Virus record (IMG/VR): IMGVR_UViG_3300050014_000823 | Location: 235,145 to 299,144 of that record | Reading direction: 5' to 3' (one strand) | DNA length: 64,000 nt | Part shown: piece after piece, positions 19,301-38,682 of the stretch | Layout of the letters: every line of letters begins with the position of its first letter | How positions within the stretch are numbered: position 1 is the stretch's first letter | The notes under the pieces: generated by a model | Database searches by the model: none | The model's input: the letters and a program-made list of their open reading frames with translations, nothing else | What the model was told of the DNA's origin: nothing | Made by a program: the position numbers and the translations under genes

Positions 19301-19634
19301 GTTTACCTAACATAGCCAAGCCTATTTTAGTCAAAGGACTTGCTTCTGCAGGATTTAACAGTCTACCATAAACGGTATTCTTGAGATTATATGACTTGAA
19401 TGGTGCGATAATACTTGCAATACCATTGACAGCATTAATAATATTTTGTGCTTGATTCTTTTCAGTAACAGGATAAAGATTGTTTGGGGTATAGAGATTC
19501 CTTGTCTGCAAGTCATTTCTTAGACTATCAGTATTAAGTAAAAGTCTTGAAGGAGTGATACCTGCATTCTGCGAAGCATTACCAGTATTATTAGTACCTC
19601 TTACGAGTGTTGGGGGTGTATTGCTACCTGCCAT
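16314..19634 (-). CDS. Large baseplate/tail protein with internal OmpA-C-like segment
   Basis: 1106 aa, lies between tape measure and LysM gene. C-terminal PVCILRVGDFFFTKVIIENLSIDY...WDMNPEGFGMQPMIAKVTL (tube-like baseplate fold); IKIVGAAS...YNYMLGRRRAQA...RYATIEF (OmpA-like). Confidence 0.65.
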   Translation of the reverse strand: MAGSNTPPTLVRGTNNTGNASQNAGITPSRLLLNTDSLRNDLQTRNLYTPNNLYPVTEKNQAQNIINAVNGIASIIAPFKSYNLKNTVYGRLLNPAEASPLTKIGLAMLGKQFAMNAGSHIAQQNFPVIKVSNLFDGAKNTHLFTKRLDVRITKKPAISNFQSFLNAVVYYFPAVDYPFTPNSTEADYIKNSGTGQLSFLYSALNNNVYKQGFASSEYFGQSILDDKALLQYSGKGFADTQLLLRSDLVNAPLSHYRSYFNYFKTNPYSNILPSDDSISQANTATSFALNTLELDSNNTQEYAPTADFVEKNFGVANIRFKEVNGFKLSETANEWINTSDEFGDDAVSNKLVWGMNGISPNASDNINKLLGTSNHADEQVNPTNQRNVSFRAYSGLLEYTRNLLNASDGAVVDITRKAFQNKNKNIVGFNGSGLWVANDSDYAMNAETAGLTGVRQHSMLDQYDRFAKAIRFEGNYVYGGNENSVIYDRVMPRIHPTLPPHESSSDQPNNRNLMFSIENLAVRVISKDSVGIIDDEYGSQIPICEVGQFNGRLMWFPPYNLEINESTQSNFDKTVMVGRNEPMYNYMHSERSATLNFTMLIDYPQQLKNATYKGTDKHRAIAEFFAFGGDPYSPAPILENPAQKQRVNDDHIEQITGPVDTPEPEVTIPEPVTMVFPNDLPKDASESSQIVDTMYLDYEYQIMPGSRQQKKVISSGFNQDIFFVTGMTKTDPPVLDKNLLPPGFSQYNYVGVKSALDKKLNELFKPVGNRRMFGIKIVGAASKLNDSKSGYNYMLGRRRAQAARQIVLGRLEAIFPGEDISSIQISIDSVGATGANPANSSGKTQKEIEAKLELPATTQERYATIEFRRTREAPPKKIPPLSYPDTVIVAGLRASNQPLVKSQNSNNASQCVMSVRKEDAAMQKGFQSVESNYYNPVFHTQTPEDFHKRLTFLQQCMRQGAAKRYDVVDEAGIPRAKNSVFGRQPVCILRVGDFFFTKVIIENLSIDYAETTWDMNPEGFGMQPMIAKVTLQMKVIGGQSLKGPIDALQNAITFNYYANSNFTSEGLYNRPWKEAENQQTYMNGILKAESDILNAAYIKKFPPKQQ

Positions 19635-19996: not shown

Positions 19997-20587
19997 ATGA
20001 AATTAAACACAAAAAAATTTGCAGGACTATGTGGAGTTAGTACAAGTACTATTAGATGTTGGTCAAGAAAAAACAAATTAAATTTTATATGTACTAAAGG
20101 TGGTCAAAGAAGATATGATGAATCTGAAGTTATAATATTTTTAAATAAAAGTAAAAGAAATTCTATTAATATAATTGAAGATTTAAAAAAATATGAAACA
20201 TCATCACCAGAATATATGAAAGCATGGTGAAATAATAATCGTGAAAAATGTCGTGAATATACAAAAAATAGAAATCATAAAAATCTTCAGTTATCTGCAA
20301 TTAAATGGATGAGAAATTTTTTATATAGAACAGAACAACAAGGATTTAAAAAAACTAAATTAAATACTATTACTGAATTTGGTTATACTCCAGAGCAATT
20401 AATAAAAAGAATTGAATGTCAGTTTCAAGATGGTATGTCATGGAGTAATAGAAAAGAATGGCATATTGACCACAGAAAACCAATTTCTATGTTTATTGAA
20501 GGTACAAGTCCAAGAATAATTAATATGTTATGTAATTTAAAACCTGTATGGGCAAAAGATAATCTATCTAAAGGTTTTAAGTTTTAA
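19997..20587 (+). pseudogene. MerR-type HTH + HNH endonuclease interrupted by an in-frame TGA
   Basis: ORFs 19997..20230 and 20309..20587 share one frame with an open 26-codon bridge (KAW*NNNREKCREY). N-terminus FAGLCGVSTSTIRCW...TKGGQRRY; C-terminus WHIDHRKPIS...NLKPVWAKDNLSKG. Confidence 0.7.
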
Positions 20588-23124
20588 CCCTTACCCTTAT
20601 AACCTCTTTTTGACTCATAGCTGTCATTTCTGATGTAAGCACCTGTCTGAGTGGCTTCATGAAACTTATAGCCGTCAATATTCATAGTAATATTTGAAAC
20701 TACTGCAACTTGTTTGTCACTGAATTCAACTTTTAATGGATTTTTAAGTAAATTTGTTAATTCTGAAAGTCCGCTACCGCCCTTGAAGTTTGCTTTTGAG
20801 ATTCTTTCAACTGCATCGGCAACTGCCATAAAGTCTTCACGACTTCCAGACATAACTGCCTTTATGTTTGCAAATGCTTCACCAACTTTTGAAACTTTAT
20901 TTGCTGTAAGAGCAATAATACCTAAAGTACTACCAAGTACTGCTAAACCAACCCAACCACCTACACCTGCGATAGCCAAAGCTGCACCGATTTCTGCAAT
21001 ACCAAGTCCGACTTCCATCATGTCTTTACCTGCACCTTTACTATTTTTTACAAGGTCACCTAAACCAAATCCTAATACTCCAATACCCGCTGCAGCCAAA
21101 CCAATGCCTGCACCAATTAATGCAACACCTGCACCGAAAGCAATAAGTGGACCTGCTGATGCACCAGCTGCTGTACTAAATGCTAAAATGCCAACGGCAG
21201 CCAAAGAAGTTACACCAATTGAAATACCTAATGTTAATACAATATCTCTTAAAACTTTTGCTTGTTTATCGTCAAGTTTACTCATGGAATTTGCAAGTAA
21301 ACTAATACCTGCGGCAGCAGTTCCAATACCTGCACCTATACCTAATGCAGCAGCCCCAACACCTGCACCTGCGCCAGCAAGCATTTTTCCTTTTCCTGCC
21401 ATTGCAGCACCTTGACCAATACCTTCACGTTGTTTACCTAAACTACTAAGACCACCACCACCTTTACTTTTACCCATGCCCATACCACCACTAACCCATT
21501 TTTCTATAGTGTGATTTAGACCTGCAGTAACTGCTTTCCATGCAACGGCTGCGGTAATTAAGCCAGCACCAGTTATCCACGGACCAACTGATTTAAATAA
21601 AGCAGTAAGTGGTTCTAAAACATTTGCCCTTGTCCAAGTTAAAACAGTATTAACAGTTTCAAGTATGGGTAATAAACCCGATTTTATTTCAAGTAAAGTA
21701 TTTTTAAGTGCATCTTCGAAGGTCTGTGAATCTATTGCACGGTCTTCCAAGGACTTACTTTCTTTCATAAATGAATTTGCCTGTTCTTTAGTAAGTGTTG
21801 AAATATCGTGCATATGACCTGCAAGTTTAACTTCATACCCCATAGTATTCTTATTAAAGATTGCAGCACCCTTAACTAATTCCTTTTCTCTATCAGATAA
21901 TCCCAGACCAGCTAAGTCTTGATTCATTTTATCTAAGTCCAGTCGTCTTTTAGTAGTTTCAAAGATTTCTTCTTTAGAAATAATACCCAATGACTCTGCA
22001 ACACTTGCAAGACGCTGTTTATCAGCAGGACTAATAAACTTTTCAAATGTACCGTCTGCTTGTTTTCTGAAAGTAGCAATGCCCTTAGTCATTTCAGAGA
22101 TTTTTTCCATGACTTTTTCAGGTTCATTACGCATCTGATAAAACATCTGCATTGGGTCTACCTTTGCAAATTCTCCACCCATAACCTGCAAGTTTGCAGT
22201 TAATTCGATTACCTTTTCAAGACTATCACCCATGTCAGCAACTTTAAGTGCTGAGTCCATGCTGACTTTCATCTTTTCAGAGTTCATAGCCATTTCAGCC
22301 ATTGCTTTTGAACCTCTCTGGAAAGTATATGTATTTAATTTTTTAAAATTATCATTTAAATTCTTAAGTACTTTAATTGTATTAACACCCATACGTTCTG
22401 AAGTATCAACAATACCTTGTACATAATTCATGGTGTTTTTAGCGTCAAAACCCATTAATTCAAATTGTGCACCGAGTTTGGTTGCCTGTTCAACACCAAG
22501 TCCAGTACCTTTACCAATTTTCATAATATCATCAACCATTTCAGAAGATAATGCACGTGCACGTCCTGTTTCATCAGCATAACCTGTCATGATAGTGCCA
22601 ACATCTTCAAGACTTCCACCTAATTTAGCAGCAAATCCTGCAGATTGTTCAAAGGTTTGACGGAGTTCAGCAGCTTTAGCACCCGACATACCAAGATTTA
22701 AAACAGTAGTTTTAATAATCTTGTCTTGGTCCATTAAAAACTTAATACCTGCACCAATTTGCTTATTGGTTTCACTAATAGTATTAACAAGATTTTTTCT
22801 ACAATTTTGCTGTTTTTCTAATTGAGCATTAACTTCTTTTTCATTTTTAATTTGCTCCTTTTGTAAATCAACAAGTTTTTTTAGTGCGGCTTTCTGTGGG
22901 TCACTTAATTTATTTTGATTGGCTAATAAGTCATTAATCATACGCTGTCTCTCAGCGATTTTCTCTGATTCTTTCGCTCTGGCAGTCTCCATATCCCCAA
23001 TACTCTTATACCACTTAGCTTCTTCGCTTAATGCGTCTTGGATAGCCTTGTGGTTTTCAAGTTCGTCTCTCAACTGATTTTGAATCTGCCTTCTTGATGG
23101 ACCTGCTGCTGGTGTTGTAGCCAT
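20584..23124 (-). CDS. Tape measure protein
   Basis: 846 aa, helical Ala/Lys/Glu-rich N-terminus and Gly/Ala-rich hydrophobic C-terminus, immediately downstream of tail chaperone genes. Confidence 0.8.
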   Translation of the reverse strand: MATTPAAGPSRRQIQNQLRDELENHKAIQDALSEEAKWYKSIGDMETARAKESEKIAERQRMINDLLANQNKLSDPQKAALKKLVDLQKEQIKNEKEVNAQLEKQQNCRKNLVNTISETNKQIGAGIKFLMDQDKIIKTTVLNLGMSGAKAAELRQTFEQSAGFAAKLGGSLEDVGTIMTGYADETGRARALSSEMVDDIMKIGKGTGLGVEQATKLGAQFELMGFDAKNTMNYVQGIVDTSERMGVNTIKVLKNLNDNFKKLNTYTFQRGSKAMAEMAMNSEKMKVSMDSALKVADMGDSLEKVIELTANLQVMGGEFAKVDPMQMFYQMRNEPEKVMEKISEMTKGIATFRKQADGTFEKFISPADKQRLASVAESLGIISKEEIFETTKRRLDLDKMNQDLAGLGLSDREKELVKGAAIFNKNTMGYEVKLAGHMHDISTLTKEQANSFMKESKSLEDRAIDSQTFEDALKNTLLEIKSGLLPILETVNTVLTWTRANVLEPLTALFKSVGPWITGAGLITAAVAWKAVTAGLNHTIEKWVSGGMGMGKSKGGGGLSSLGKQREGIGQGAAMAGKGKMLAGAGAGVGAAALGIGAGIGTAAAGISLLANSMSKLDDKQAKVLRDIVLTLGISIGVTSLAAVGILAFSTAAGASAGPLIAFGAGVALIGAGIGLAAAGIGVLGFGLGDLVKNSKGAGKDMMEVGLGIAEIGAALAIAGVGGWVGLAVLGSTLGIIALTANKVSKVGEAFANIKAVMSGSREDFMAVADAVERISKANFKGGSGLSELTNLLKNPLKVEFSDKQVAVVSNITMNIDGYKFHEATQTGAYIRNDSYESKRGYKGKG

Positions 23125-23167
23125 TTGTAATAGTTATTATAGATATAAATACAAAAGACCGAGATTT

Positions 23168-23347
23168 TTATCGTCCCGGTCTAAAATTGTTTTTACTTCG
23201 TGCTTGCTCTTGAAGTTTTTCTATTTCTTCATTCTCTCTTTGTAGTAAAAATAAGAAGTGTCGTCTTCTGTAGATTGGCAAGTGTTCGATATAATCTGCT
23301 TGGAACTTAGCGTGCTTGGTCAAGACGTATATCTCTTCATCGACCAT
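23168..23347 (-). CDS. Tail assembly chaperone second segment (T part of a G/GT pair), likely reached by -1 frameshift
   Basis: Not in the ORF track. MVDEEIYVLTKHAKFQADYIEHLPIYRRRHFLFLL...; the frame is open back to the T9C4 slippery run at 23374-23386. Confidence 0.75.
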   Translation of the reverse strand: MVDEEIYVLTKHAKFQADYIEHLPIYRRRHFLFLLQRENEEIEKLQEQARSKNNFRPGR

Positions 23348-23364
23348 TTTTTTATATTCGCCCG

Positions 23365-24279
23365 TTAAGTTGAGGGGAAAAAAAAATCTATGCCCACAGT
23401 TAGGTTAGCATGAAATTTATATCCGTCTTTAGCCATGAACTCGTAATCCATATCAACATCAGGACTGACATCCATAATTTTTCTACGAATTGTAAAAGCA
23501 TCCAAAGCAGGCATTGCATCAACAAACTTGTCAATATATGACCTGTCGGTTTTCTCGTTGATAGCAACAATATGTGATTTTAATTTCATTGTGTTGAAGT
23601 CTGAAAACTCTTGATTATAAGTTTCTTGTAATGCCTGTGCTTTCTTAAATAATTGATTTTCATCACCCGAACTAATAAGTCTGAATGTTACAGTCTTCTT
23701 ACGCATAGGAATTTCAACAGTGAAATGACCATACTGGTCAGGTTCTTGCTTAACTATCTTATACTTAAGTTTAGTTAAATCAATGGTATCTTTAAAAGGT
23801 ATACCACTTCGTGGGTCAGTAACTTGTACGGTATAATCTGGACCATAACTTGAAGTCCTTAAGAACAATATAACCGCATTTCTGTCGCCTGCAAGAAGTT
23901 CTTCGGGAAGAATACCTGGAGTTTTAATCTTTCTACGGAGTAAAACATCCAATACAGTACCATTTTCTATTAAAGAAGGTGTAGTAAGTAAGTCTTCGTC
24001 TTTTGAAGTCATGTATTCAACATTAACTTCGGCAATACGACTTTGATAAAACTGACCTTTTGACGGAAGTTTAATGGCTTCATAAGAAGTCATCAAGTCT
24101 GGGTCGGTCTCTTTCGACATGGTTTTTTCAAAGTCCTGTGGATTAAAAACAGGCATTTTAGGTATTCCTGCACCAACTACTGGTGGCTGACCCTTTTCCT
24201 GACCTACAGTCGCTTCTTTATATTTTTTAATGGTTTCAGAGATATTCTGCTTTTTTGGTTTGTCGTTAATTTCTTCCAT
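23365..24279 (-). CDS. Tail assembly chaperone / baseplate hub assembly protein (G part)
   Basis: IKLPSKG..Y, VEYMTSKDEDLL, LLAGDRNAVILFLR, ending VGIDFFFP, upstream of tape measure. Confidence 0.75.
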   Translation of the reverse strand: MEEINDKPKKQNISETIKKYKEATVGQEKGQPPVVGAGIPKMPVFNPQDFEKTMSKETDPDLMTSYEAIKLPSKGQFYQSRIAEVNVEYMTSKDEDLLTTPSLIENGTVLDVLLRRKIKTPGILPEELLAGDRNAVILFLRTSSYGPDYTVQVTDPRSGIPFKDTIDLTKLKYKIVKQEPDQYGHFTVEIPMRKKTVTFRLISSGDENQLFKKAQALQETYNQEFSDFNTMKLKSHIVAINEKTDRSYIDKFVDAMPALDAFTIRRKIMDVSPDVDMDYEFMAKDGYKFHANLTVGIDFFFPST

Positions 24280-24417: not shown

Positions 24418-25281
24418 ATGAGTAGAGATAGATATAAAGAAGAAAAAGACTTTCAGGAACTAACTTCGGTTTCAGTAAATAGTGGTGAACAAATATCCCA
24501 AATAAAAGCAGAAATAAGTAAATTACTGCCACCGGACATTAAAATCATCGCAAAAAATGAAAGTCAAAAAAAACTTATAAATTCTATAAAAAATAATGAG
24601 ATAACGATTTGTGCAGGTCGGGCAGGAACTGGTAAAACCTTTGTTGCAATGGCAATAGCACTTGGATTACTGAGAAAACCGTCAAATAGATTTAAAAAAA
24701 TCTACTTGGTCAAATCAGTTACCACGTTAAAGGGTGAGGAACTTGGATTTCTTAAAGGCGATTTAAAAGAAAAAATTGACCCGTTTATGTGGAGTTTCTA
24801 CATTAATATGGAAAAGCTAATACTTGAATCTTCGATGAAGTCCCTTCTTGAAAAGGATATTATCAGACCATTCCCGCTTGCATACATGCGTGGTGCCAGC
24901 TTGGATGATTGTATAATCATTGCAGATGAAATGCAGAACGTCAACATTGACAACTCTTTAACACTTATGACTCGTATTGGTAGTAACTCAAAGTTAATAT
25001 TACTTGGGGACATGAACCAAATCGACATGAAGAACAAGCACGAGAGTTCATTAGAGGCTATTTTAGACATGTTTACTGACACACAGAACATCGGAACTAT
25101 AATGATGTCAGGTGAGGATGAGAATGTCAGAAACCCTCTTATTGTTGTAATAGAAGCAAAATATCTCGCATATCAGAAACTGCCGAAGAAGAAAAAGGTA
25201 ACAATGGTCAATTCTACAACTCTTATGGTTGAAAACCGATATGTTGACGCAAATAAAATAACAGTAGGAAGTAGTGAATAA
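24418..25281 (+). CDS. phoH: PhoH-family ATPase
   Basis: GRAGTGKT Walker A, GEELGFLKGDLKEK, PLAYMRGASL, IADEMQN, LLGDMNQID. Confidence 0.9.
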   Translation: MSRDRYKEEKDFQELTSVSVNSGEQISQIKAEISKLLPPDIKIIAKNESQKKLINSIKNNEITICAGRAGTGKTFVAMAIALGLLRKPSNRFKKIYLVKSVTTLKGEELGFLKGDLKEKIDPFMWSFYINMEKLILESSMKSLLEKDIIRPFPLAYMRGASLDDCIIIADEMQNVNIDNSLTLMTRIGSNSKLILLGDMNQIDMKNKHESSLEAILDMFTDTQNIGTIMMSGEDENVRNPLIVVIEAKYLAYQKLPKKKKVTMVNSTTLMVENRYVDANKITVGSSE

Positions 25282-25564
25282 TATGGACACAAAAATATTA
25301 GTAATATACATTGGTGTTGCTGGAATTCGTAGTGAAGATATTCCAGAGTACGTACAGAAAGTATCGAGCAAAATAACACCACAAACTTTTGAGGGTGAAA
25401 TAATTTTATTACCCACACAATCATACGATACAAAGGTCGTATGCATCAACCCTGAGTATATAACCGAACCAGAATTGGTCGAGCGACACAGGACTATGAT
25501 GAAAGAATTACAGGAAGCACTCCAGAATCAATTGGAGCAATTAAAAACAAAAAGCAATGAGTAA
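25274..25564 (+). CDS. Hypothetical protein
   Basis: 96-aa ORF overlapping both neighbours in the operon. Confidence 0.7.
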   Translation: MNNMDTKILVIYIGVAGIRSEDIPEYVQKVSSKITPQTFEGEIILLPTQSYDTKVVCINPEYITEPELVERHRTMMKELQEALQNQLEQLKTKSNE

Positions 25565-26300
25565 AAAACTTAAAATCGGAATTGACATTAATGAAGTACT
25601 GAGGGCAAGATGGCTTCAGTTTGACAGGTTTTACGACCAGGAATTTGGTACTGAGGATAGTGAAACAAAATATGAGTTTGACCTATTTGGTAAATATCCT
25701 TGGAAAGATACCGTTGAGGTAGAAAAGGAATTAAAAGAACCTGACGATATGCCTGCAGATATCAACCCAATTGATTATCAACTGGATAAAGACGGTGAAG
25801 CACCTGCTGACATTTTCTTATTTAAAGCACCTGTGGAGAAACATCTTACCGTAAAGGAAGTTTATAATCGTTTCATGTATGAAGATTTTCTATTTGAAAT
25901 CTTCGCAAGTGCACCAATGATGTACAAGGACATGGATGTGCACGTAAACAGATTTCAAGAAAAATATCGTGACACGGTTGATTTTACAATTGTTTCAAAA
26001 GAAAATCGTTTCAGCATACCATCGACATTGTTCTTTCTCAGTAAAATTCGCAGTAGATTTACTGAGTTTCGCTTTGTTGAAACCAACGAAGAAATGTTTG
26101 AAGGTCTTGATATTCTTATCACTGCAGACCCTGAACTTCTCGATGGCGTTGTTCCAAGCAAAAGCGTAGTAAAACTATTAAGACCATATAACGAAAAATG
26201 TTTTAGTGGCGAAATTACTCCGGTATTTCAAATCAATGACTTGATTGACAACGAAGAATTTGAAAAATTAATTGACTATATAAAACCAGTAACAGAATGA
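25557..26300 (+). CDS. HAD-superfamily 5'(3')-nucleotidase-like protein
   Basis: IGIDINEVLR (DxN variant of motif I), IVSKE, TLFFLSK, LITADP. Confidence 0.55.
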   Translation: MSKKLKIGIDINEVLRARWLQFDRFYDQEFGTEDSETKYEFDLFGKYPWKDTVEVEKELKEPDDMPADINPIDYQLDKDGEAPADIFLFKAPVEKHLTVKEVYNRFMYEDFLFEIFASAPMMYKDMDVHVNRFQEKYRDTVDFTIVSKENRFSIPSTLFFLSKIRSRFTEFRFVETNEEMFEGLDILITADPELLDGVVPSKSVVKLLRPYNEKCFSGEITPVFQINDLIDNEEFEKLIDYIKPVTE

Positions 26301-27511
26301 GCACAGACGTATTAAATGTAGAAGCACAAAAAGCCGAAACAGAAAAAATCGAAAAGATTAAAACATCTTTAAATAACATCGTGACCAAGAAATCAAAATT
26401 CTTGTTTTGCGTATCTGAATCTCAAAGTCCCGCAGCAAGTGTGTATGAAATTTATTTTCATGCAACAGTTGTAAAAAACATGGGATACGAAGTCCTTATC
26501 TTAGTTGAAAAGGGCGATTACGTTATTCCTACTTGGATTGAAAAGGAACTCACAGCATTTAAACACGTATCAATGGCTGACCCAAAATTAGCAGTTGGAC
26601 CTGAAGATGTAATGATAATTCCTGAAGTATATTCCAACGTAATGGAACAGACCAAAAACTTACCTTGCGTAAGAGTTGGATTATTGCAGTCAGTTGACTA
26701 CATGGTTAACTCTTTAATTCCCGGCACAGACTGGAAATCATTTAACATTAACGATATTGTCACAACTTCAGAAACATTGAAAGAGTGGGTTGAAACTTTC
26801 TACGGTAAGAATAAATTCAACATTAAAACTTACAACATTGGTATTCCCGATTACTTCGAAAGAACAGAAGTTCCACAGAAACCAATAATTTCTGTTGTAG
26901 GTAGGAATGCCAATGAAATCTCAAAGTTTGTTAAATTGTTTTTCAGCAGGTTTCCGCAGTACAGTTGGGTTACTTTTGACCCGATGCTTACAAAATCAAA
27001 ACCACCACAGCAAATGCGTAGGGTTGACTTTGCAAAAAGACTTCAAGGTAACTTCGCAGCCGTTTGGATTGACAGGATTGCCAGCTTTGGTACATTTCCA
27101 CTTGAGTGTATGAAATCCGGTACAATTCCTATTTGTTTGAAACCCGATATTACACCTGAATATATTCTCGAAAGAGATACTGTAAGCGGTAACACCGTTG
27201 TAAAAATTGCCGATGGTGCAGGAATTTGGACTGATAATTATTATGACCTTCCGGTTATAACAGGTGAAGTTCTTGTTAAGTTCCTTGACGATGCAATTTC
27301 TCCCGACCTATATACTTCAATGGAAAAAATTGCAAGTAAATACAGCCAGGAAAATGCAGAACTGCAGCTTGCAGAAATCTATCAAGGATTTCTTAACACA
27401 AGAATTGCATTATTCCAAAGTGCTTTAGGACTTCCAGAAGTACCTGCAAACGGTCCTGTTCAAGAAGAACACGCTCCAGAAGCACCAAAAAATAACTTAA
27501 GAATTGTATAA
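26297..27511 (+). CDS. GT-B fold glycosyltransferase-like protein
   Basis: VMIIPEVY, WIDRIASFGTFPLECMKSG (ExFG-like nucleotide-sugar motif). Confidence 0.65.
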   Translation: MSTDVLNVEAQKAETEKIEKIKTSLNNIVTKKSKFLFCVSESQSPAASVYEIYFHATVVKNMGYEVLILVEKGDYVIPTWIEKELTAFKHVSMADPKLAVGPEDVMIIPEVYSNVMEQTKNLPCVRVGLLQSVDYMVNSLIPGTDWKSFNINDIVTTSETLKEWVETFYGKNKFNIKTYNIGIPDYFERTEVPQKPIISVVGRNANEISKFVKLFFSRFPQYSWVTFDPMLTKSKPPQQMRRVDFAKRLQGNFAAVWIDRIASFGTFPLECMKSGTIPICLKPDITPEYILERDTVSGNTVVKIADGAGIWTDNYYDLPVITGEVLVKFLDDAISPDLYTSMEKIASKYSQENAELQLAEIYQGFLNTRIALFQSALGLPEVPANGPVQEEHAPEAPKNNLRIV

Positions 27512-27520
27512 TTTATAAAC

Positions 27521-28351
27521 ATGAATACAACAGTAATAATTCCAATACATGAGTATAACGATAAGATTTCAAGTCTTTTAGACCACGCAATTGAATCGGT
27601 ACTTAAACAAGAAAAACTAACAGAGCAACCACAAATTCTTGTGGTATATGCTTCTGCAATAGAAGAAGGTATAATCGCCTTTCAACAGAGTCTGTTGAGA
27701 AAGTACCAGAATGCTCTTGACATTCTTTTTATTAAGAATGACGGTAAAACCGATTATCAGTCACAAGTTAATCTTGGAGTAGAGTCGGTAACTACCGCAT
27801 ATTTCTCGGTACTTGAATTTGATGACGAATATGGTACTACCTATTTCAGCATTGCAAACAAATACATTAAAGCATATCCGGAAATTGACGTATTTCTTAC
27901 CATGATGATTGAGGTCAACGAACAGAATATGGGTATTAAGTTAACCAATGAAACCGTATGGGCACAACAGTTTGTAGGTGAGAACGGTGAAATGGGTTAC
28001 TTGAACCTTAACGCATTGAAACAGTACACAGACTTTAAAATGAGTGGTGCTATTATTAAAAAGTCAGAATTTGTCAACGTAGGTAAGTTTAAATCAAACA
28101 TTAAGTTAACCTTCATGTATGAATTCTTACTCAGAGCATTAAACAATGCCTGCAAAGTCTTCAGTATTCCAAAAATCGGCTACAAACACCTTGCAACACG
28201 TGAAGACAGTATGTTTGATGTTTACCAGAAGAACATGCCTGCAGACGAAAGAAAATTTTGGTTTGATACTGCAACTAAAGAAGCAAACTTTGTCAATGAC
28301 AGAACTATTGACATGTCAAGAATGCTGAAGATAGTTGTAGATGAAAAATAA
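27521..28351 (+). CDS. GT2 family glycosyltransferase
   Basis: TVIIPIHE, QVNLGVESV, SVLEFDDEY. Confidence 0.75.
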   Translation: MNTTVIIPIHEYNDKISSLLDHAIESVLKQEKLTEQPQILVVYASAIEEGIIAFQQSLLRKYQNALDILFIKNDGKTDYQSQVNLGVESVTTAYFSVLEFDDEYGTTYFSIANKYIKAYPEIDVFLTMMIEVNEQNMGIKLTNETVWAQQFVGENGEMGYLNLNALKQYTDFKMSGAIIKKSEFVNVGKFKSNIKLTFMYEFLLRALNNACKVFSIPKIGYKHLATREDSMFDVYQKNMPADERKFWFDTATKEANFVNDRTIDMSRMLKIVVDEK

Positions 28352-28374
28352 TCGTATACTGAATTCTACCGTGA

Positions 28375-29130
28375 ATGAAAGAGAAAGAGTTAGAATGTGC
28401 TCCGTATTTTGCAGAAAGGGAAGAGAAAGCAGTACTCGATTATATTAATTCAAATTCCGCACAGGAAAAGAATAAAATATACAACGAAATCCTGCTCGAA
28501 CCCTTCCGCAAGATGATTCAATCCATACTTCGTAGGTATCCGATTCATATCGGAAACTACGATATGGAAGAAGTCGAATCTAATGCTTTGACACACCTTA
28601 TAGAACATATGGTGAAGTTTAATCCCGACAAGATTACCAAGTCCGGAGTGAAAACCAAAGCATTTAGTTATTGCCAGACGATTATCAGAAACTACTACAA
28701 AGACCACAGTAAAAAAAGTTACACTGAGAAAAAAATCAACTTGAGTTTTGACGACTATGTTGATGAGATTAATGAAAATATCGAATACACCTATGAAATG
28801 GAAGTCGATACACACAATCAACTCGATAAACTTATTAAAACTGTGATAGATAAAATAGAGGATAAAATCAATAATGACCCTCTAATGAAGAAGAATGAGG
28901 TAATTGTCGGTGATGCTATCGCCAACGTATTAAAAAATTGGCAGGTGTTATTTCAAGAAGACACTCCAGATGGCAAATACAATAAGAGAGTAACAAATAA
29001 GTTTGCAAAAAACAAAATATTACTTTTTTTAAAAGAGCAAACTGGTCTGTCAACCAAAGAGATAAGAATTGCAATTAAACCTTTCAAGGATATTTACTTC
29101 CTGGAAAAAATTGACTATCTCGATGACTAA
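28375..29130 (+). CDS. gp55: Phage late-transcription sigma factor (T4 gp55-like)
   Basis: YFAEREEKAV..., region-2-like EEVESNALTHLIEHMVKFNPDK and KAFSYCQTIIRNYY; no recognisable region 4. Confidence 0.65.
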   Translation: MKEKELECAPYFAEREEKAVLDYINSNSAQEKNKIYNEILLEPFRKMIQSILRRYPIHIGNYDMEEVESNALTHLIEHMVKFNPDKITKSGVKTKAFSYCQTIIRNYYKDHSKKSYTEKKINLSFDDYVDEINENIEYTYEMEVDTHNQLDKLIKTVIDKIEDKINNDPLMKKNEVIVGDAIANVLKNWQVLFQEDTPDGKYNKRVTNKFAKNKILLFLKEQTGLSTKEIRIAIKPFKDIYFLEKIDYLDD

Positions 29131-29147
29131 CATAAATTAAAAAACCT

Positions 29148-29155
29148 GTATTTAT
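29148..29155 (+). promoter_or_regulatory. Putative late promoter GTATTTAT
   Basis: Motif 20 nt upstream of ATG 29176; one of 22 gene-oriented copies. Confidence 0.65.
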
Positions 29156-29175
29156 ATGTACTAAAACTATAAACG

Positions 29176-29565
29176 ATGGCAAGACCTGTTAGAAGAAAAT
29201 TGGCATTTGACGAAGAAAGCGTGAATAAGCTACTTCAAGAAATCTATGATGATAGTCACAATTTAAAAGCTAAGATTACCCGCTTATTTAATAAGTGGGA
29301 AATCAAGGTGAAAGAAAGTGGCGAAGTTGCCGCAATTGGCGACCAGATAATTAAACTTATTTTGGCTGAAGCTAAAAATCAAGACCAGAAAATCATGATA
29401 TTAAAATATCTGAAGGAAGTGGTGTTTGATAACAAGGTAGGTGGACCGAACAACAGACCTGAACCTGAAAGGGAAGGTGAAATGACTACAGCAAGAAGAA
29501 ATGAACTTCTTAAGATGGTGGAAGACGGTATTGAGAGAAAAGATAAAGAAAGACAGCAAAACTAA
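29176..29565 (+). CDS. Hypothetical protein
   Basis: 129-aa helical ORF after the late motif. Confidence 0.75.
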   Translation: MARPVRRKLAFDEESVNKLLQEIYDDSHNLKAKITRLFNKWEIKVKESGEVAAIGDQIIKLILAEAKNQDQKIMILKYLKEVVFDNKVGGPNNRPEPEREGEMTTARRNELLKMVEDGIERKDKERQQN

Positions 29566-30884: not shown

Positions 30885-31129
30885 TAGTAGACCAGAAATT
30901 AAACAAACAGTTTGTGGGTGTATATCTTATCGATGGCGATATAGAAGGCACACAACTCGCAACAACAGTTAAGCCTAATTGGTTCAGGATACTGATGACC
31001 AATTGGTTTTTAGGTTGGAAATGGATGAGTATTCCAGTTTTAAAAACAAAACAAGAGCAACTTAAAAGAATGAAAGCAATTGCTACCGACATCGCAAATG
31101 GTGTTGAGGAAGCAAATAAAGCAAAGTAA
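30881..31129 (+). CDS. Hypothetical protein
   Basis: 82-aa ORF with ATGA overlap. Confidence 0.6.
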   Translation: MIVDQKLNKQFVGVYLIDGDIEGTQLATTVKPNWFRILMTNWFLGWKWMSIPVLKTKQEQLKRMKAIATDIANGVEEANKAK

Positions 31130-31130
31130 T

Positions 31131-31538: not shown

Positions 31539-31542
31539 AATT

Positions 31543-33036: not shown

Positions 33037-33052
33037 TTTTATTGTACATTTG
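33023..33052 (+). promoter_or_regulatory. Bacteroidota-type host promoter TTG-N19-TACATTTG
   Basis: TACATTTG at 33045-33052 and TTG at 33023-33025, directly before the nuclease gene. Confidence 0.5.
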
Positions 33053-33058
33053 TCCTGT

Positions 33059-34549: not shown

Positions 34550-34556
34550 ATAAAAG

Positions 34557-34622: not shown

Positions 34623-35114
34623 TTACAAGTTGAGTATACATCTCCAGGGCTGGATTGAAAGTGTAATGTTGGTCAAAGTATCTTCATCGTAACTGTTGTC
34701 GCCAAAGTCGATTGATGTTATCATACATTGTTCCAAGAACCATTTTTCTACCTCAATACCTGTTGGGTCGAGTGCTTTTAATAGAATGTTCTTCTTATAA
34801 CCTGCTGCGTAACCCATACGTCCTGTAAGAGATTCAGCGTGTAATCTAACCCATTCCATGAGTTGCTGTGATGTTGATGGACCAATTGGGTCAAGGAATG
34901 TGATATCCATTGATTCCCAGTTATAACGTCCCGCAACATAGTTACGCTCATTCATGAAGTTAATTTCTACTGAATTGATTTTCATTGAAGGTCTTTTGAA
35001 TTTTTGTACTTTCCAAACTTCAATGCCTAATTCATCTGCGAACTCCGCAAAGAATCTATTTACTCTTTTCGGTTCATATTCGAAAGGGATGCCCCTAATC
35101 ATTTCTCCTGCCAT
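34623..35114 (-). CDS. gp19: Tail tube protein
   Basis: 163 aa, YEPKRVNRF, RPSMKI, YVAGRYNWESMDITFLDP, GYAAGYKK; lies downstream of the sheath. Confidence 0.88.
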   Translation of the reverse strand: MAGEMIRGIPFEYEPKRVNRFFAEFADELGIEVWKVQKFKRPSMKINSVEINFMNERNYVAGRYNWESMDITFLDPIGPSTSQQLMEWVRLHAESLTGRMGYAAGYKKNILLKALDPTGIEVEKWFLEQCMITSIDFGDNSYDEDTLTNITLSIQPWRCILNL

Positions 35115-35790: not shown

Positions 35791-38682
35791 TTATGCACCA
35801 ACGTCAGCAAAGGATGCTCCGGTAGGAGTAATTGTAAATGTGATTCCGATATATTCAACTGCACGTGTTGGTTTGATGAAGATTTCGCCAAATAACTCGT
35901 TTCTGTCGATTGTTTCTGGAGTGTTAATAATGTCGTCCATTTTAATTCTGAAGTCATATAAACCTCTTTCTCTCTTAACTGTATCGAGTACAGGAGTTGC
36001 TTTTGACAAGAACTGGTCGATAGTAGTTTGGTCGTTCTGTTCGAATACCAATCTGATTGCGATGTTTGTAATAAGAACTTTAAGTTGAAGAAGTAATCTA
36101 CGAACATTGATTCTATCAAGAGCACTTGCTTTAACCTGTAAGGTCTTCTGACCAAAGATTGCTGTACCTGCATCTGCAAAGTCAGCCATTGGATTGATTC
36201 TACCTGTGTAAAGAATATCACGTGCTTCCAGTGATAATTTATACATAGATTTTCTTGCATTTGTAACACCACGGTTCAAACCAGCAGGTGCGAACCAAGG
36301 GAATGCTGTATTGTCAGTATAAGCCATTGCTTTTACTACTTCACCTGTAGGTGGAATATAAACGTTGACGTTATTCTGAGTATCCCTCATTTGAATCCAA
36401 GGGAAGTATGTACATGAGTAGTTGCTGTCAATACCTGATGTATCAAGTAAATCAACAATACCCTGTGCTGCAAGTACGTCCTGTTTTTCACTACCTGTTG
36501 TTTTAGGTATTTCAATGTCAGGAGTATCAATTACATAAAGTGTGTCAGTTCTTTGAGTAGTCAACATGTTGATTGTATCGAGAACTAATACGTTTTGGTC
36601 TGACCAGTTGATACCTGGAGTTGCAAATACGTTAATTGTTACCTGTTCTGGGTTTGAGAATGTATTTATTGCAGTTTCCCATGCTTGGAAGTCATTTGTT
36701 GCTGGAACTAATGGCTGAACACCATCATAAATTCCACCTTGACGATAAAAGTCACCGTATGAACGACTGTTTCTGTTAACATCCCAACCATCGAAACCAC
36801 CTGCAGGTGCAAGAGTGAATTTTCTTGAAGCCAATAAGTAATAAGGATTTAATGGGTCAACAACATCTGCGATACTTTCAAACGAACCTGCACCAACCTC
36901 AAAACTACCAATTAATTCAGCACCATCCATATATGTTGCACCAGTTGCGTTAATATCCATGTGGAAACCTTTAGTTTTTGTGTATCCAATTGGATTTGCA
37001 TTTACATTATTGTAGCCGTCAAAGTTAAAGAAGTTCTGGTTGATACCATCACCAACAACACCCGGAGCATCATAACCACTTGCTGACATACCTAAGTATA
37101 CTCTTGCAACTCTTTCGTTTGACTCATAATGAGTTTTGTAGAATACCTTTGGTGTTATACCTGCATAGTTAGTAGGAACACTTCCTGTGGTAGTTGCACT
37201 TAATGCATAATCATTAAACCACAAACCTTCGAAACCTGCAGGGAATGAATCCTGATGTTCTTCTGAATCCATTTCAACCATGATGTATTTGCTCTGAAGG
37301 TCATATTCGCCATCAGTTGTACCGATACGCTGTGCAATATATGCATTAGTACCTTTTATTAATGTACATCTTGTGTATGTTTCCAAAACATTGGGAGCTG
37401 CGTCAGTATCGTAGAAAGCACGTACAAGTACGTCAAATTCCATTGTAATTGGATTGATATTTCCAATACTGATTTTTATTTCTTGGTTAGCTGCGTCACC
37501 GTCAGAGATACTTATGAATTTAAATAATCTTGCAACATTATTACCTTTAAGTTGTGACACAACCCAAGGAGTTTCTGGAGTTTTGAATTGTGTTTTATAG
37601 TCTCCAAATAAAGTGGTGTTTGTTCTAATCATATCGGTGTGAATACCATATGCATATGATTGAACGCCACTTATTCCGTATTTTGTTAATCCACTTAAAA
37701 CTGGGTCTGTAATTAAAACAGAAGTACCGTCTGCATCAAGTTTTTTAATTAATTGAGGATAGGTTGCTTGACACCAAATTTTAGTTTTTTTGTCTTTAGG
37801 AAGGTTTCCTATTACGTTTGGTAAGAAACTTGAAGCATCTGGATTTAATGAAGCCGTATAAGATTCTGTACCACCACTATAGTTATTAGGTGCTGGAACT
37901 GCAGGTACTTTAAGTCCTCTATTTGTTGCTTTCAAAGTAAATTGTCCAAACAAATCACCACTACCAATTAATGTGGTATTAGTCGAAGCTGAAATTGTAA
38001 GACCAGTACAATCAAATACAGTTGTTGATGGCAAGTTTACGTTATCTTGAACATAACCTCTGCTTCTTATAACTGCAAGCACCATACCTTCATATGCTGA
38101 ATATGAAGTACCGCTTAAAACAGTTGTTATTTGACGAACAGTACCACCTGTAAGGTTTACTGTTGTTGCTGTGAAAGAATATGATGTTCCAAGGAATGAA
38201 GTTGGACCTGTTTTAGTAAAACCTGAGAATGATGTTCCTGTTTGACCACTACTATATATTGTAACACCCAAATAGGTATTGCCTGCATATGTTTTAGTCA
38301 CAGCACTGCTCGTTGAAACAACACCCATTGTGTGAGGGTCAACACCCGCACTTAAGGTAATGTTCCACGCATTTCCTGCATCATATCCGCTTAAACCCAA
38401 TACTCTTGTAACCCACATTTGGTTTGATTCATCCAAATATGCATTAGCTGTATAAGGTAATTGATATTGAAGTTGTCCGTTACTTGGAAACCTTTTAACG
38501 CTCTGAGGACCAAATCTATTTGCAAATTCAGTCTGGTCTTGAACATATACTGGTTCGAAAGCAGGACCTTTTGTTGTTTCGCCAACAACACCTAATGTTG
38601 TTATACCTACGTTACGTGTAACGAATGTTAAGTCACGTTCTCTAAATTTTATACCCGGAGAGGTAAATACGAATTCTGCCAT
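35791..38682 (-). CDS. gp18: Contractile tail sheath protein
   Basis: FTSPGIKFRERDLT, LGVVGETTKGPAFEP, PWFAPAGLNRG, GQKTLQVKASALDRINVRRLL, IFIKPTRAVEYI. Confidence 0.95.
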   Translation of the reverse strand: MAEFVFTSPGIKFRERDLTFVTRNVGITTLGVVGETTKGPAFEPVYVQDQTEFANRFGPQSVKRFPSNGQLQYQLPYTANAYLDESNQMWVTRVLGLSGYDAGNAWNITLSAGVDPHTMGVVSTSSAVTKTYAGNTYLGVTIYSSGQTGTSFSGFTKTGPTSFLGTSYSFTATTVNLTGGTVRQITTVLSGTSYSAYEGMVLAVIRSRGYVQDNVNLPSTTVFDCTGLTISASTNTTLIGSGDLFGQFTLKATNRGLKVPAVPAPNNYSGGTESYTASLNPDASSFLPNVIGNLPKDKKTKIWCQATYPQLIKKLDADGTSVLITDPVLSGLTKYGISGVQSYAYGIHTDMIRTNTTLFGDYKTQFKTPETPWVVSQLKGNNVARLFKFISISDGDAANQEIKISIGNINPITMEFDVLVRAFYDTDAAPNVLETYTRCTLIKGTNAYIAQRIGTTDGEYDLQSKYIMVEMDSEEHQDSFPAGFEGLWFNDYALSATTTGSVPTNYAGITPKVFYKTHYESNERVARVYLGMSASGYDAPGVVGDGINQNFFNFDGYNNVNANPIGYTKTKGFHMDINATGATYMDGAELIGSFEVGAGSFESIADVVDPLNPYYLLASRKFTLAPAGGFDGWDVNRNSRSYGDFYRQGGIYDGVQPLVPATNDFQAWETAINTFSNPEQVTINVFATPGINWSDQNVLVLDTINMLTTQRTDTLYVIDTPDIEIPKTTGSEKQDVLAAQGIVDLLDTSGIDSNYSCTYFPWIQMRDTQNNVNVYIPPTGEVVKAMAYTDNTAFPWFAPAGLNRGVTNARKSMYKLSLEARDILYTGRINPMADFADAGTAIFGQKTLQVKASALDRINVRRLLLQLKVLITNIAIRLVFEQNDQTTIDQFLSKATPVLDTVKRERGLYDFRIKMDDIINTPETIDRNELFGEIFIKPTRAVEYIGITFTITPTGASFADVGA

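What the first reader, a model, noticed from the sequence alone, without database searches (positions are those of the whole stretch)
23168..23390. Programmed -1 frameshift signal in the tail assembly chaperone
The chaperone ends GAT TTT TTT TTC CCC TCA ACT TAA. Slipping -1 on the U9 run gives ...DFFFPLNLTGEYKKMVDEEIYVLTKHAKF..., open to 23168, immediately before the tape measure gene. This matches the established G/GT arrangement of tailed phages, which T4 itself is not known for, and the second segment is missed by the ORF track.
Basis: partly seen in the sequence, partly recalled or inferred. Interest (0 to 1): 0.6.

Follow-up and report, generated by a model that had tools for sequence, protein, structure and literature searches.

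The report
Frameshift site in phage tail chaperone
A run of nine T's near the end of a jumbo phage's tail-assembly chaperone gene (a distant relative of T4 gp26) is kept unchanged in dozens of related phages and almost certainly lets a fraction of the protein be extended by a 70-residue domain in the -1 frame; this is the classic G/GT trick of tailed phages, found in a chaperone family where the papers I could search do not report it.

Summary
On the minus strand a 304-codon ORF (24279..23365) ends GAT TTT TTT TTC CCC TCA ACT TAA. The -1 frame is open from just before the T9 run (23386..23378) to TAA at 23170..23168, 43 nt before an 846-aa tape-measure-like gene.

- In 60 distinct related viral contigs (ORF1 49-76% identical) the run is kept at synonymous sites, the 0-frame stop follows within 3-4 codons, and the -1 frame stays open for 173-215 nt.
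- The six codons between the 0-frame stop and the ATG at 23347 show third-position wobble in the -1 frame. That ATG is absent in 7 lineages, so the segment is translated from upstream.
- None of the 120 nearest protein clusters is a fused form, which excludes a sequencing error.

ORF1 belongs to Pfam T4_baseplate (T4 gp26). Its model's three best structural matches out of 48,161 chains are the three solved tail assembly chaperones, as two tandem domains.

Distant gp26-like genes carry a shifted-frame extension at the same place: a homologous one in the +1 frame in six, a -1 open frame of unshown homology at a T7 run in two. T4 itself has none.

The mechanism is either ribosomal -1 slippage or RNA-polymerase slippage on T9, and it is unresolved. 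This is a new member of a known kind.

The parts
23365..24279 (-). ORF1, the 'G' form of the chaperone: 304 aa, a T4 gp26-like protein (Pfam PF12322) with two tandem TAC-like domains (about residues 58-154 and 181-273)
   Evidence: PF12322 27.4 bits against a cut-off of 24.5; phrog_150. AF2 model, pLDDT 81; top 3 of 48,161 chains are 3FGX, 3KLU and 2OB9; all three are TACs. BFVD matches to gp26-like 'baseplate hub subunit/assembly chaperone' proteins.
23378..23386 (-). T9 slippery run. It contains U_UUU_UUU (23386..23380) and U_UUU_UUC (23383..23377) in the 0 frame
   Evidence: Invariant core in 60 distinct relatives. F299 and F300 are TTT in 61/61, while other conserved Phe codons mix TTT and TTC. 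It is the only T9/A9 in the window, against 14.3 expected.
23365..23367 (-). 0-frame stop (TAA) ending the G form, 4 codons after the run. It overlaps the Leu-Thr codons of the -1 frame
   Evidence: In relatives a stop sits 3-4 codons after the run.
23168..23386 (-). -1 frame segment ('T' domain). It is 72 codons counted from the first T of the run, 70 of them added beyond F300, and ends with stop 23170..23168. The fusion GT would be 370 aa, read as 24279..23380 then 23380..23168 on the minus strand
   Evidence: Conserved peptide FFFPxxLAGEYKKMVDEEIYILTKHAKFQADYIExLPIYRRRHFL... in 53 aligned relatives. Coding periodicity in the -1 frame both before and after the ATG. AF2 model of three helices, pLDDT 88.8.
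23345..23347 (-). In-frame ATG (Met13 of the -1 segment), the only possible independent start. It is not conserved
   Evidence: replaced in L013, L048, L049, L053, L061, L065 and L073. L049, L053 and L073 have no ATG/GTG/TTG at that position.
23147..23182 (-). Hairpin (GACCGGGA...UCUCGGUC, 23156..23182 with flanking bases) plus a T-rich tail and the motif TTTTGTATTTATAT, between the end of the T segment and the next gene. Terminator-like, possibly followed by a promoter
   Evidence: By eye, present with compensatory stem changes in most of the 57 relatives folded. Function not tested.
20584..23124 (-). Tape-measure-like protein, 846 aa: helical N-terminal part and Gly/Ala-rich hydrophobic C-terminal part
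   Evidence: No Pfam, PHROG or NCBIfam hit. Atlas language-model features score 0.94 to PF10145 tape-measure clusters, 29 of 30 named hits. In relatives, the complete next ORFs found by the scan (first ATG-started ORF over 200 codons) are 817-866 aa. Identity is inferred.
34623..35114 (-). Tail tube protein (163 aa), same strand, 10 kb upstream
   Evidence: phrog_4542, E 1.4e-24.
35791..38682 (-). Tail sheath protein (963 aa)
   Evidence: phrog_23 E 1.5e-61; PF17482.

Best explanation
The 304-aa gene is the tail assembly (tape-measure) chaperone of an uncultured jumbo myovirus with a record of about 299 kb. It is a distant member of the T4 gp26 family, built of two tandem chaperone-fold domains. 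Most translation ends at TAA 23367..23365 and gives the short 'G' form. A minority of ribosomes decoding the Phe codons of the U9 run slip back one base. tRNA-Phe re-pairs perfectly on U_UUU_UUU or U_UUU_UUC. These ribosomes continue in the -1 frame for 70 more codons and make a 370-aa 'GT' fusion ending 43 nt before the tape-measure gene.

By analogy with lambda gpG/gpGT, the G part of both forms would coat the tape measure protein. The small helical T domain would recruit the tube (or a tube-initiator) protein, and neither form would stay in the virion.

Shown here: the site, its selective conservation, the coding constraint on the -1 segment upstream of its only ATG, and the chaperone fold. 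Inferred: that the shift happens on the ribosome rather than in the RNA polymerase, its efficiency, and the binding partners. My odds: recoding by either route about 0.9; ribosomal slippage as the main route about 0.55-0.6.
For: - Anatomy.
- Relatives: 80 viral contigs, 60 of them distinct. All keep GA(T/C) followed by T8-9, a 0-frame stop 3-4 codons later, a -1 frame closed 19-85 nt upstream, and a -1 frame open 173-215 nt downstream in the contigs that do not end early. That frame ends 25-100 nt before a long next ORF in the 52 loci where the scan found one, with one exception at 378 nt; complete next ORFs are 817-866 aa.
- T8 variants: each retains one canonical heptamer. GAT TTT TTT TCC keeps U_UUU_UUU and GAC TTT TTT TTC keeps U_UUU_UUC.
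- Nucleotide-level constraint: column entropy is 0 across the run, while flanking third positions reach 1.5-1.9 bits. F299 and F300 are TTT in 61/61, whereas six other conserved Phe codons carry 5-18 TTC.
- Translation of the -1 frame upstream of ATG 23347: entropy by codon position is 0.30/0.25/1.09 in the six codons between the 0-frame stop and the ATG. That matches the pattern downstream (0.61/0.35/1.20) and in ORF1 (0.72/0.48/1.19).
- The ATG is replaced in 7 lineages, three of which have no start codon at that position.
- No fused form exists: 119 of the 120 nearest protein clusters end DFFFPxx, at 295-320 aa.
- Two separate run assemblies carry T9.
- T domain: folds confidently from the -1 alignment (pLDDT 88.8).
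- Synteny sheath-tube-gp26-like-small ORF-tape measure is seen in phages Mel-JY01, immuto, SP-15 and HSE3.
- Distant relatives carry the homologous extension in a shifted frame at the same FF motif, some with no homopolymer (immuto: TTT CTT TGG). This points to a ribosomal event in the family.
- Lambda G/GT function and the 30:1 ratio: PMC5009743.
Against: - There are no protein or RNA data. No RNA run holds this DNA, so the fusion has never been observed.
- No conserved downstream stem-loop or pseudoknot was found. RNAalifold gives 0 pairs over 51 sequences, the single-sequence fold has z = -0.57, and there is no Rfam match.
- In E. coli, U_UUU_UUU is a weaker shift site than A_AAA_AAG (PMC5009743).
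- A run of nine T's is longer than a ribosome needs and is exactly the length at which bacterial RNA polymerase slips efficiently (same paper).
- The tape-measure identity of the next gene rests on position, composition, length conservation and a language-model lead only.
- The tube gene is not adjacent in this clade; a 9.5-kb block on the + strand intervenes.
Confidence: 0.6

Rival explanations
1. Transcriptional slippage is the main route. RNA polymerase stutters on the T9 tract (rU:dA hybrid) and makes a subpopulation of mRNAs with U10. Standard translation of these gives exactly the same 370-aa GT protein. U8 transcripts would give a short third product.
For: - Bacterial RNA polymerase slips with high efficiency in vivo on runs of 9 A or T, and Thermus dnaX and Shigella mxiE use this productively (PMC5009743).
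- The run is T9 in 53 of 60 distinct relatives and never shorter than T8, although seven T's would do for a ribosome.
- No RNA stimulator is conserved downstream.
- Homopolymers of 9 or more are about 5-fold depleted elsewhere in the genome, as expected if they are costly to transcribe faithfully.
Against: - T8 variants keep a canonical heptamer in the right frame each time, which a polymerase would not care about.
- The Xanthomonas jumbo phages have a -1 open frame (homology to the T domain not shown) at only T7.
- Relatives such as Flavobacterium phage immuto shift at TTT CTT TGG with no homopolymer, so the family-wide event cannot be transcriptional.
- T9 also equals two overlapping heptamers plus three Phe codons that the protein keeps in both frames.
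- Which polymerase transcribes late genes of this phage is unknown.
Confidence: 0.3
2. There is no recoding. Two separate proteins are made: the 304-aa chaperone, and a 59-aa protein started at ATG 23347, by independent initiation or by termination-reinitiation 18 nt after the stop.
For: - An in-frame ATG exists in most relatives (53 of 60), preceded by an A-rich leader.
- This phage does not use Shine-Dalgarno sites (1 of 51 long ORFs), so the lack of one is no argument.
- GenBank records of distant relatives annotate the segment as a separate small ORF.
Against: - The six codons upstream of the ATG show -1 frame coding periodicity (0.30/0.25/1.09) and a conserved peptide L-A-G-E-Y-K-K.
- No start codon lies between the upstream -1 stop and that ATG.
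- The ATG is lost in 7 lineages. Three have no ATG/GTG/TTG at that position, and the next Met is 54-62 residues in (L049, L053 and L073).
- This reading would not explain the frozen T-run.
Confidence: 0.05
3. Artefact or DNA-level change: a homopolymer miscall in assembly, a recently broken gene, or phase variation by replication slippage (T9/T10 subpopulations).
For: Homopolymers are error-prone in sequencing and in replication. The window comes from a metagenome assembly.
Against: - The same arrangement appears in 80 contigs from many independent metagenomes.
- 119 of the 120 nearest protein clusters stop right after the run and none is fused.
- Two run assemblies agree exactly, though both may be the source samples.
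- Both frames are under purifying selection.
Confidence: 0.02

Closest known systems
[quoted passage not shown]
   Same: A chaperone gene lies directly upstream of the tape-measure gene. There is a slippery heptamer a few codons before its stop. A -1 frame extension with no conserved start of its own ends just before the tape-measure gene. The arrangement is conserved while the sequences diverge, and relatives use either a -1 or a +1 shift.
   Different: The slip site is a U9 homopolymer (lambda has G_GGA_AAG). The G part is about twice as long and is a tandem of two TAC folds. It belongs to Pfam T4_baseplate rather than to a family named as a TAC. The T part is only about 70 residues. The tube gene is 10 kb away in this clade. 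Production and ratio of the two forms are not shown here.
T4 gp26 ('baseplate hub subunit' / 'hub assembly chaperone', Pfam PF12322)
   Same: ORF1 passes the Pfam gathering score. Its model matches predicted structures of gp26-like proteins of many myoviruses. T4 gp26 is listed as a hub assembly chaperone and is not a secure virion component (PMC3004832, PMC9024508). T4 gp26 ends ...EFFELL, roughly co-linear with ...DFFFPST here.
   Different: In T4, gene 26 is followed at once by gene 25, has no shifted-frame extension, and is not next to the tape-measure gene 29. A direct profile comparison with T4 gp26 alone is not significant. The link therefore runs through the family model and through structure.
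Solved tail assembly chaperones: HK97 (2OB9), B. subtilis YqbN (3KLU), Rbstp2171 (3FGX)
Productive transcriptional slippage on A9/T9 tracts (Thermus thermophilus dnaX; Shigella mxiE)
   Same: A run of nine identical A/T bases lies at the junction of two overlapping frames. One extra base in the RNA gives the extended product.
   Different: Those cases are cellular genes with demonstrated heterogeneous mRNAs. Here nothing is known about the RNA, and relatives with shorter or no runs still have the shifted extension.

Membership tests
G/GT-type tail assembly chaperone with programmed frameshift | Gene lies between the tail tube (major tail) gene and the tape-measure gene | tested here: met
   It is directly upstream of the tape-measure-like gene, with a 43-nt gap after the -1 ORF. 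Sheath and tube are on the same strand upstream, separated by an inserted 9.5-kb block on the + strand. In Mel-JY01, immuto, SP-15 and HSE3 the order is strictly sheath-tube-gp26-like-small ORF-tape measure.
G/GT-type tail assembly chaperone with programmed frameshift | A second ORF overlaps the 3' end in a shifted frame, with a slippery sequence in the overlap | tested here: met
   The -1 frame opens 8 codons before the run. U_UUU_UUU and U_UUU_UUC lie in the 0 frame.
G/GT-type tail assembly chaperone with programmed frameshift | The arrangement and slip site are conserved in relatives, and the extension is under protein-coding selection without a start of its own | tested here: met
   60 distinct loci were compared. 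Entropy periodicity holds upstream of the ATG. The ATG is lost in 7 lineages.
G/GT-type tail assembly chaperone with programmed frameshift | TAC fold of the G part | tested here: met
G/GT-type tail assembly chaperone with programmed frameshift | Two products, G and GT, are made in a fixed ratio and both are needed for tail assembly | not testable with these tools
   The phage is uncultured and no RNA run holds it.
G/GT-type tail assembly chaperone with programmed frameshift | G binds the tape measure protein, T binds the tube protein, and both are absent from virions | not tested
Pfam PF12322 T4_baseplate (T4 gp26 family) | Score above the curated gathering threshold | tested here: met
   27.4 bits against 24.5, E 3.3e-6, residues 63-282 on model positions 1-199 of 219. 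phrog_150 'baseplate hub' E 3.3e-6. The same family is precomputed for nearly all homologous clusters.
Pfam PF12322 T4_baseplate (T4 gp26 family) | Direct detectable similarity to T4 gp26 itself | tested here: not met
   hhalign of the ORF1 profile (A2) against the single T4 gp26 sequence gives probability 0.2, E 0.25. tblastn with ORF1 did not reach T4. Membership rests on the family HMM and on structure matches to gp26-like proteins of T4-type phages.
Programmed transcriptional slippage site | Homopolymeric A/T tract of about 9 or more at the frame junction | tested here: met
   T9 at 23386..23378. It is T9 in 53 of 60 relatives and T8 in the rest.
Programmed transcriptional slippage site | Heterogeneous mRNA population (U10, U8) from a homogeneous DNA template | not testable with these tools
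   There are no RNA runs. Only assembled contigs were available for the DNA.

The most novel reading that the evidence does not exclude
The whole T4 gp26 / PF12322 family ('baseplate hub subunit' in most annotations) is the tape-measure chaperone of T4-type and many jumbo myoviruses. It is a tandem duplication of the TAC fold. Its ancestral gene carried a recoded C-terminal T domain at a conserved Phe-Phe motif. Lineages have switched between -1 slippage on U-runs (this clade and, if their -1 frame proves homologous, the Xanthomonas jumbo phages) and +1 slippage (Microcystis phage Mel-JY01, Flavobacterium phage immuto, Bacillus phages SP-15 and HSE3, Streptococcus phage GXN1, megaphage LR756508). 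T4 itself lost the T domain. That would identify T4's 'missing' G/GT equivalent and give gp26 a concrete function. The extension is currently annotated as a separate hypothetical protein in every public record I looked at that annotates it.
Probability: 0.55. Interest if true: 0.6.

Novelty: new member of a known kind. Interest (0 to 1): 0.45.

Why it matters
The G/GT frameshift is one of the most conserved recoding events in tailed phages, and T4 has long stood out as lacking it. Here the event sits in a chaperone that belongs to T4's own gp26 family and has the chaperone fold twice over. This gives three things:
- a correct gene model, a 370-aa GT product, for a large clade of uncultured peat, lake and sediment jumbo phages;
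- a fix for the annotation of cultured phages, where the extension is listed as a separate small ORF;
- a testable function for gp26, whose role in T4 hub assembly is still described as contradictory.

The site is also a clean natural case for separating ribosomal from polymerase slippage. The same protein junction is served by U9, U8, U7 and non-homopolymeric +1 sites in different lineages.

Tried and rejected
- Downstream stimulator: RNAalifold on 51 sequences, 110 nt from the run, gave 0 conserved pairs. The single-sequence fold is no better than shuffles (z -0.57). There is no Rfam match at E <= 1. The only notable pairing in the MFE is the U-run with the A-rich Lys codons, which would occlude the site itself. 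I did not take it as a stimulator.
- Upstream SD-like stimulator: the GGN Gly codon and the preceding codon vary freely, and the phage lacks SD sites. Rejected.
- T domain: no Pfam, PHROG or NCBIfam family.
- ORF1 profile against PDB sequences: no hit at E <= 1.
- Foldseek against PDB: nothing at E <= 0.001.
- Tape measure: no family hit. BLASTP against the annotated tape measure of phage immuto showed no significant similarity.
- blastn of the region against 50,697 phage records: no match.
- hhalign of ORF1 profile against T4 gp26: not significant.
- T-domain HMM: did not detect the -1 extension of the Xanthomonas phages or anything after T4 gene 26. Homology of the Xanthomonas extension is therefore not shown; only its frame and position are.
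- Sequencing runs: no RNA holders. Laid contigs only confirm presence.
- Literature: seven searches returned results and none found a paper describing a frameshift in a gp26-like gene. This is absence in the held library only.
- No alternative genetic code was used.
- The fused GT protein was not folded or searched as one chain, because a -1 join cannot be given by reference. The two parts were treated separately.
Full report
**What is in the sequence**

Read on the minus strand, a 304-codon ORF (24279..23365) ends ...GGC ATA GAT TTT TTT TTC CCC TCA ACT TAA. The nine T's occupy 23386..23378. In the 0 frame they form two overlapping canonical X_XXY_YYZ heptamers: U_UUU_UUU (23386..23380) and U_UUU_UUC (23383..23377).

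The -1 frame is closed eight codons upstream of the run. It then reads FFFPLNLTGEYKKMVDEEIYVLTKHAKFQADYIEHLPIYRRRHFLFLLQRENEEIEKLQEQARSKNNFRPGR and stops at 23170..23168. That is 43 nt before the ATG (23124) of an 846-aa protein. A slip with the two Phe-tRNAs on 23385..23380 would re-read base 23380 and give a 370-aa fusion: 300 residues of ORF1 plus 70 new ones. The only inaccuracy is that a mechanical ORF list does show the tail of the second segment, as a 59-aa ORF from ATG 23347.

**Is it more than chance?**

- T9/A9 occurs exactly once on either strand of the 64-kb window. Dinucleotide-preserving shuffles give 14.3 +/- 5.9, and every shuffle has at least one.
- In the whole 299-kb virus record there are 7 runs of nine or more, against roughly 36 expected from a first-order model.
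- Five of those runs lie in short open frames. One lies near the 5' end of a 302-codon open frame. Only this one lies near the 3' end of a long ORF.
- Long A/T homopolymers are thus avoided in this AT-rich genome (35% GC) and kept here.

**What the genes are**

ORF1 passes the gathering score of Pfam PF12322 'T4_baseplate', the T4 gp26 family: 27.4 bits against 24.5, residues 63-282 on model positions 1-199 of 219. It also matches phrog_150 'baseplate hub'.

An AlphaFold2 model built on 40 homologues (pLDDT 81, pTM 0.70) matches predicted structures of many 'baseplate hub subunit / baseplate hub assembly chaperone' proteins of myoviruses in BFVD. One example is Bacillus phage SP-15, E 2e-17, TM 0.82.

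Against one representative of each of 48,161 PDB clusters, the three best matches are:

The 846-aa neighbour has no Pfam, PHROG or NCBIfam hit. It has no significant BLASTP similarity to the annotated tape measure of phage immuto. Several features do fit a tape measure protein:
- its position;
- its helical N-terminal part and Gly/Ala-rich hydrophobic C-terminal part;
- its nearly constant length in relatives: complete next ORFs found by my scan are 817-866 aa;
- language-model features that land on PF10145 tape-measure clusters, score 0.94, 29 of 30 named hits.

I treat that identity as inferred.

Sheath (35791..38682) and tube (34623..35114) lie upstream on the same strand. Between the tube and the chaperone sit a GIY-YIG homing endonuclease and a 9.5-kb block of + strand genes (exonuclease, glycosyltransferases, PhoH). 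The window is the last 64 kb of a 299-kb, about 91% complete virus record from a peat metagenome.

**Comparative test of the frameshift**

A scan of IMG/VR returned 80 loci encoding ORF1 relatives at 49-76% identity. Many lie on contigs of 320-370 kb, and 60 are distinct around the site. The findings are as follows.

- *Arrangement.* Every locus has GA(T/C) followed by T8-9, a 0-frame stop three or four codons later, and a -1 frame closed 19-85 nt upstream. The -1 frame is open for 173-215 nt downstream in the contigs that do not end early. It ends 25-100 nt before a long next ORF in the 52 loci where my scan found one, with one exception at 378 nt.
- *Run length.* The run is T9 in 53 loci. 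The T8 variants are of two kinds, and each keeps one canonical heptamer in the right frame: GAT TTT TTT TC(C/T) keeps U_UUU_UUU and GAC TTT TTT TTC keeps U_UUU_UUC.
- *Nucleotide constraint.* Column entropy is zero across the core of the run, while the third positions of the flanking codons reach 1.5-1.9 bits. As a control within the same 61 sequences, six other conserved Phe codons of ORF1 carry 5-18 TTC each. F299 and F300 are TTT in 61 of 61. The constraint is on the nucleotides, not only on the Phe residues.
- *Coding of the -1 segment.* The consensus is FFFPxxLAGEYKKMVDEEIYILTKHAKFQADYIExLPIYRRRHFLxLLQKENEEIE, with mean column identity 69%. It has the entropy periodicity of a coding region: 0.61/0.35/1.20 by codon position.
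- *Coding upstream of the ATG.* The six codons between the 0-frame stop and the only in-frame ATG show the same periodicity (0.30/0.25/1.09). The synonymous series are TTA/CTA, GCG/GCA/GCT/GCC, GGT/GGG/GGC/GGA, GAA/GAG, TAT/TAC and AAA/AAG. No start codon lies between the upstream -1 stop and that ATG.
- *The ATG itself.* It is replaced in seven lineages. Three of them (L049, L053, L073) have no ATG, GTG or TTG at that position. The segment must therefore be entered from ORF1.
- *Fold.* The -1 alignment folds with high confidence into a three-helix domain (pLDDT 88.8).
- *No fused form.* Among the 120 closest protein clusters in a 5.8-billion-protein collection, 119 end DFFFPxx at 295-320 residues and none is a fused form. 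Two run assemblies carry the stretch without a difference, although they may be the source samples.

Sequencing error, recent pseudogenisation and DNA-level phase variation are effectively excluded.

**Wider family**

By tblastn the nearest cultured relatives are very distant, at 23-33% identity.
- In Microcystis phage Mel-JY01, Flavobacterium phage immuto, and Bacillus phages SP-15 and HSE3, the order is sheath - tube - gp26-like - small ORF - tape measure. In Streptococcus phage GXN1 the sheath and the gp26-like gene are annotated, with an unannotated open frame after the gp26-like gene.
- In all of these, and in the unannotated megaphage LR756508, the gp26-like ORF ends a few codons after a conserved (D/N/E)-F-(F/L) motif. 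A long open frame follows in the +1 frame.
- An HMM of this clade's T domain hits only that +1 frame, with a deliberately large database size of 1e5. E values are 4e-9 for Mel-JY01 and 0.008 for LR756508. GXN1, immuto and HSE3 are weaker, and there is nothing in the other frames.
- The sites there are UUU_UGG (Mel-JY01), CUU_UGG (immuto, no homopolymer), and UUU_CGU_CCC_(A/C) (HSE3, GXN1). Each allows +1 re-pairing of a Phe, Leu or Pro tRNA.
- In the Xanthomonas jumbo phages XacN1 and Xoo-sp13 the following frame is -1 and the site is GCU UUU UUU AUU, again U_UUU_UUU. Homology of that extension to the T domain was not detectable.
- T4 gp26 ends ...RGLKEFFELL, and gene 25 starts on its stop codon. 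There is no extension, and the tape-measure gene 29 lies elsewhere.
- Reviews list T4 gp26 as a hub assembly chaperone of uncertain presence in the virion (PMC3004832; PMC9024508). Several GenBank records already name it 'baseplate hub assembly chaperone'.
- Where the public records I inspected annotate the extension (six of the eight), they list it as a separate hypothetical protein. None annotates a joined product.

**Mechanism**

What is shown:
- a slippery site in the correct frame;
- selection on its nucleotides;
- selection on the -1 reading frame from the site onward;
- the absence of an alternative entry into that frame.

What is inferred is where the slip happens. The ribosomal reading is supported by three points. 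Canonical heptamers are retained in both kinds of T8 variant. The T7 site in the Xanthomonas phages is another. Family members also shift without any homopolymer.

Three points count against it being the whole story. No conserved downstream structure was found. U_UUU_UUU is only moderately shifty in E. coli. Bacterial RNA polymerase slips efficiently on runs of nine A or T, which Thermus dnaX and Shigella mxiE exploit (PMC5009743).

Both routes give the identical protein (D-F-F-F-P-L-N-L...), so only RNA sequencing can separate them. I put recoding by either route at about 0.9. Ribosomal slippage as the main route is about 0.55-0.6, and polymerase slippage as the main route is about 0.3.

The functional model follows lambda: G coats the tape measure, T recruits the tube protein, and the ratio is about 30:1 as described in PMC5009743. 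This is analogy only.

**Rivals rejected**

- Independent initiation at ATG 23347, or termination-reinitiation, cannot be dismissed on the absence of a Shine-Dalgarno site. Only 1 of 51 long ORFs in the window has one, which points to a host of the Bacteroidota type. It does fail on the coding periodicity upstream of the ATG and on the lineages without a start codon.
- Artefact and phase variation fail on the 80 independent contigs and the 119 unfused protein clusters.

**Verdict**

As a -1 G/GT-type site it is a new member of a well-known kind.

What lifts it above routine is the identity of the chaperone: a double-TAC-fold member of the T4 gp26 family. A shifted-frame extension recurs at the same motif across very distant myoviruses, homologous in the +1 cases and of unshown homology in the two Xanthomonas -1 cases, while T4 has none. 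I found no description of this in the searchable literature. That is absence from the held library, not proof of novelty.

No alternative code was used.

Noticed in passing
window 23147-23182 (minus strand), and the same place in L005-L083: A strong hairpin straddles the last codons and stop of the T segment (GACCGGGA/UCUCGGUC here). It is followed by TTTTGTATTTATAT about 20 nt before the tape-measure ATG. By eye, most of the 57 relatives folded keep it, with compensatory stem changes (GGCCGAGG/TCTCGGCC, GACCAAGA/TCTTGGTC, GTCCAAGT/ACTTGGAC). It looks like a terminator followed by a promoter-like motif, which would uncouple chaperone and tape-measure transcription.
   Followed up: partly
whole window and genome G000: A/T homopolymers of 9 or more are strongly depleted: 1 in the window against 14.3 expected from shuffles, and 7 in 299 kb against about 36 expected. 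Another T9 at genome 194275-194283 (outside the window) lies 75 nt into a 302-codon open frame and was not examined.
   Followed up: partly
window, 51 ORFs of 150 aa or more: Only 1 of 51 long ORFs has an SD-like 4-mer at -20..-4. Leaders are A/T-rich. This suggests a host that does not use Shine-Dalgarno initiation, such as Bacteroidota.
   Followed up: partly
window 24418-34564: The tail module is split. Between the tube gene and the chaperone lie a GIY-YIG homing endonuclease (33920-34564, minus strand) and a 9.5-kb + strand block. The block holds an exonuclease (33050-33844), a protein with a gp5-like N-terminal OB segment (32146-33036), a glycosyltransferase-like gene (27521-28351, weak match) and PhoH (24418-25281). 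At least one related 328-kb contig shows a similar gap of about 10 kb between tube and chaperone.
   Followed up: partly
L001, L002, L087, L088, L089, L090 (public phage records): GenBank records of Mel-JY01, immuto, SP-15, HSE3, Xoo-sp13 and XacN1 annotate the shifted-frame extension as a separate small hypothetical protein and the upstream gene as 'baseplate hub subunit'. In each case the start was chosen downstream of (or, in Mel-JY01, at a TTG within) the overlap. None has a joined CDS.
   Followed up: yes
window 5347-6498 (minus strand): A 383-aa ORF combines an HNH endonuclease region (PF01844; phrog_1271) with a C-terminal segment matching phrog_7851 'cysteine dioxygenase' (E 9e-31). 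This is an unusual pairing.
   Followed up: no
window 7280-15649 (minus strand): A sugar-modification cluster lies downstream of the tail genes. It holds a UDP-GlcNAc 2-epimerase (7280-8311), three family-2/4 glycosyltransferases (11658-14970), a methyltransferase (9691-10254) and a KilA-N domain protein (14960-15649).
   Followed up: no
window 16314-19634 (minus strand): An 1106-aa protein lies next after the tape measure, following a gap of about 950 nt. It has no Pfam, PHROG or NCBIfam match. By position it could be a baseplate hub or spike component.
   Followed up: no
window 35181-35696 (minus strand): A 171-aa ORF between sheath and tube has no PHROG family match. It could be a second tube-like or tail-completion protein.
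   Followed up: no
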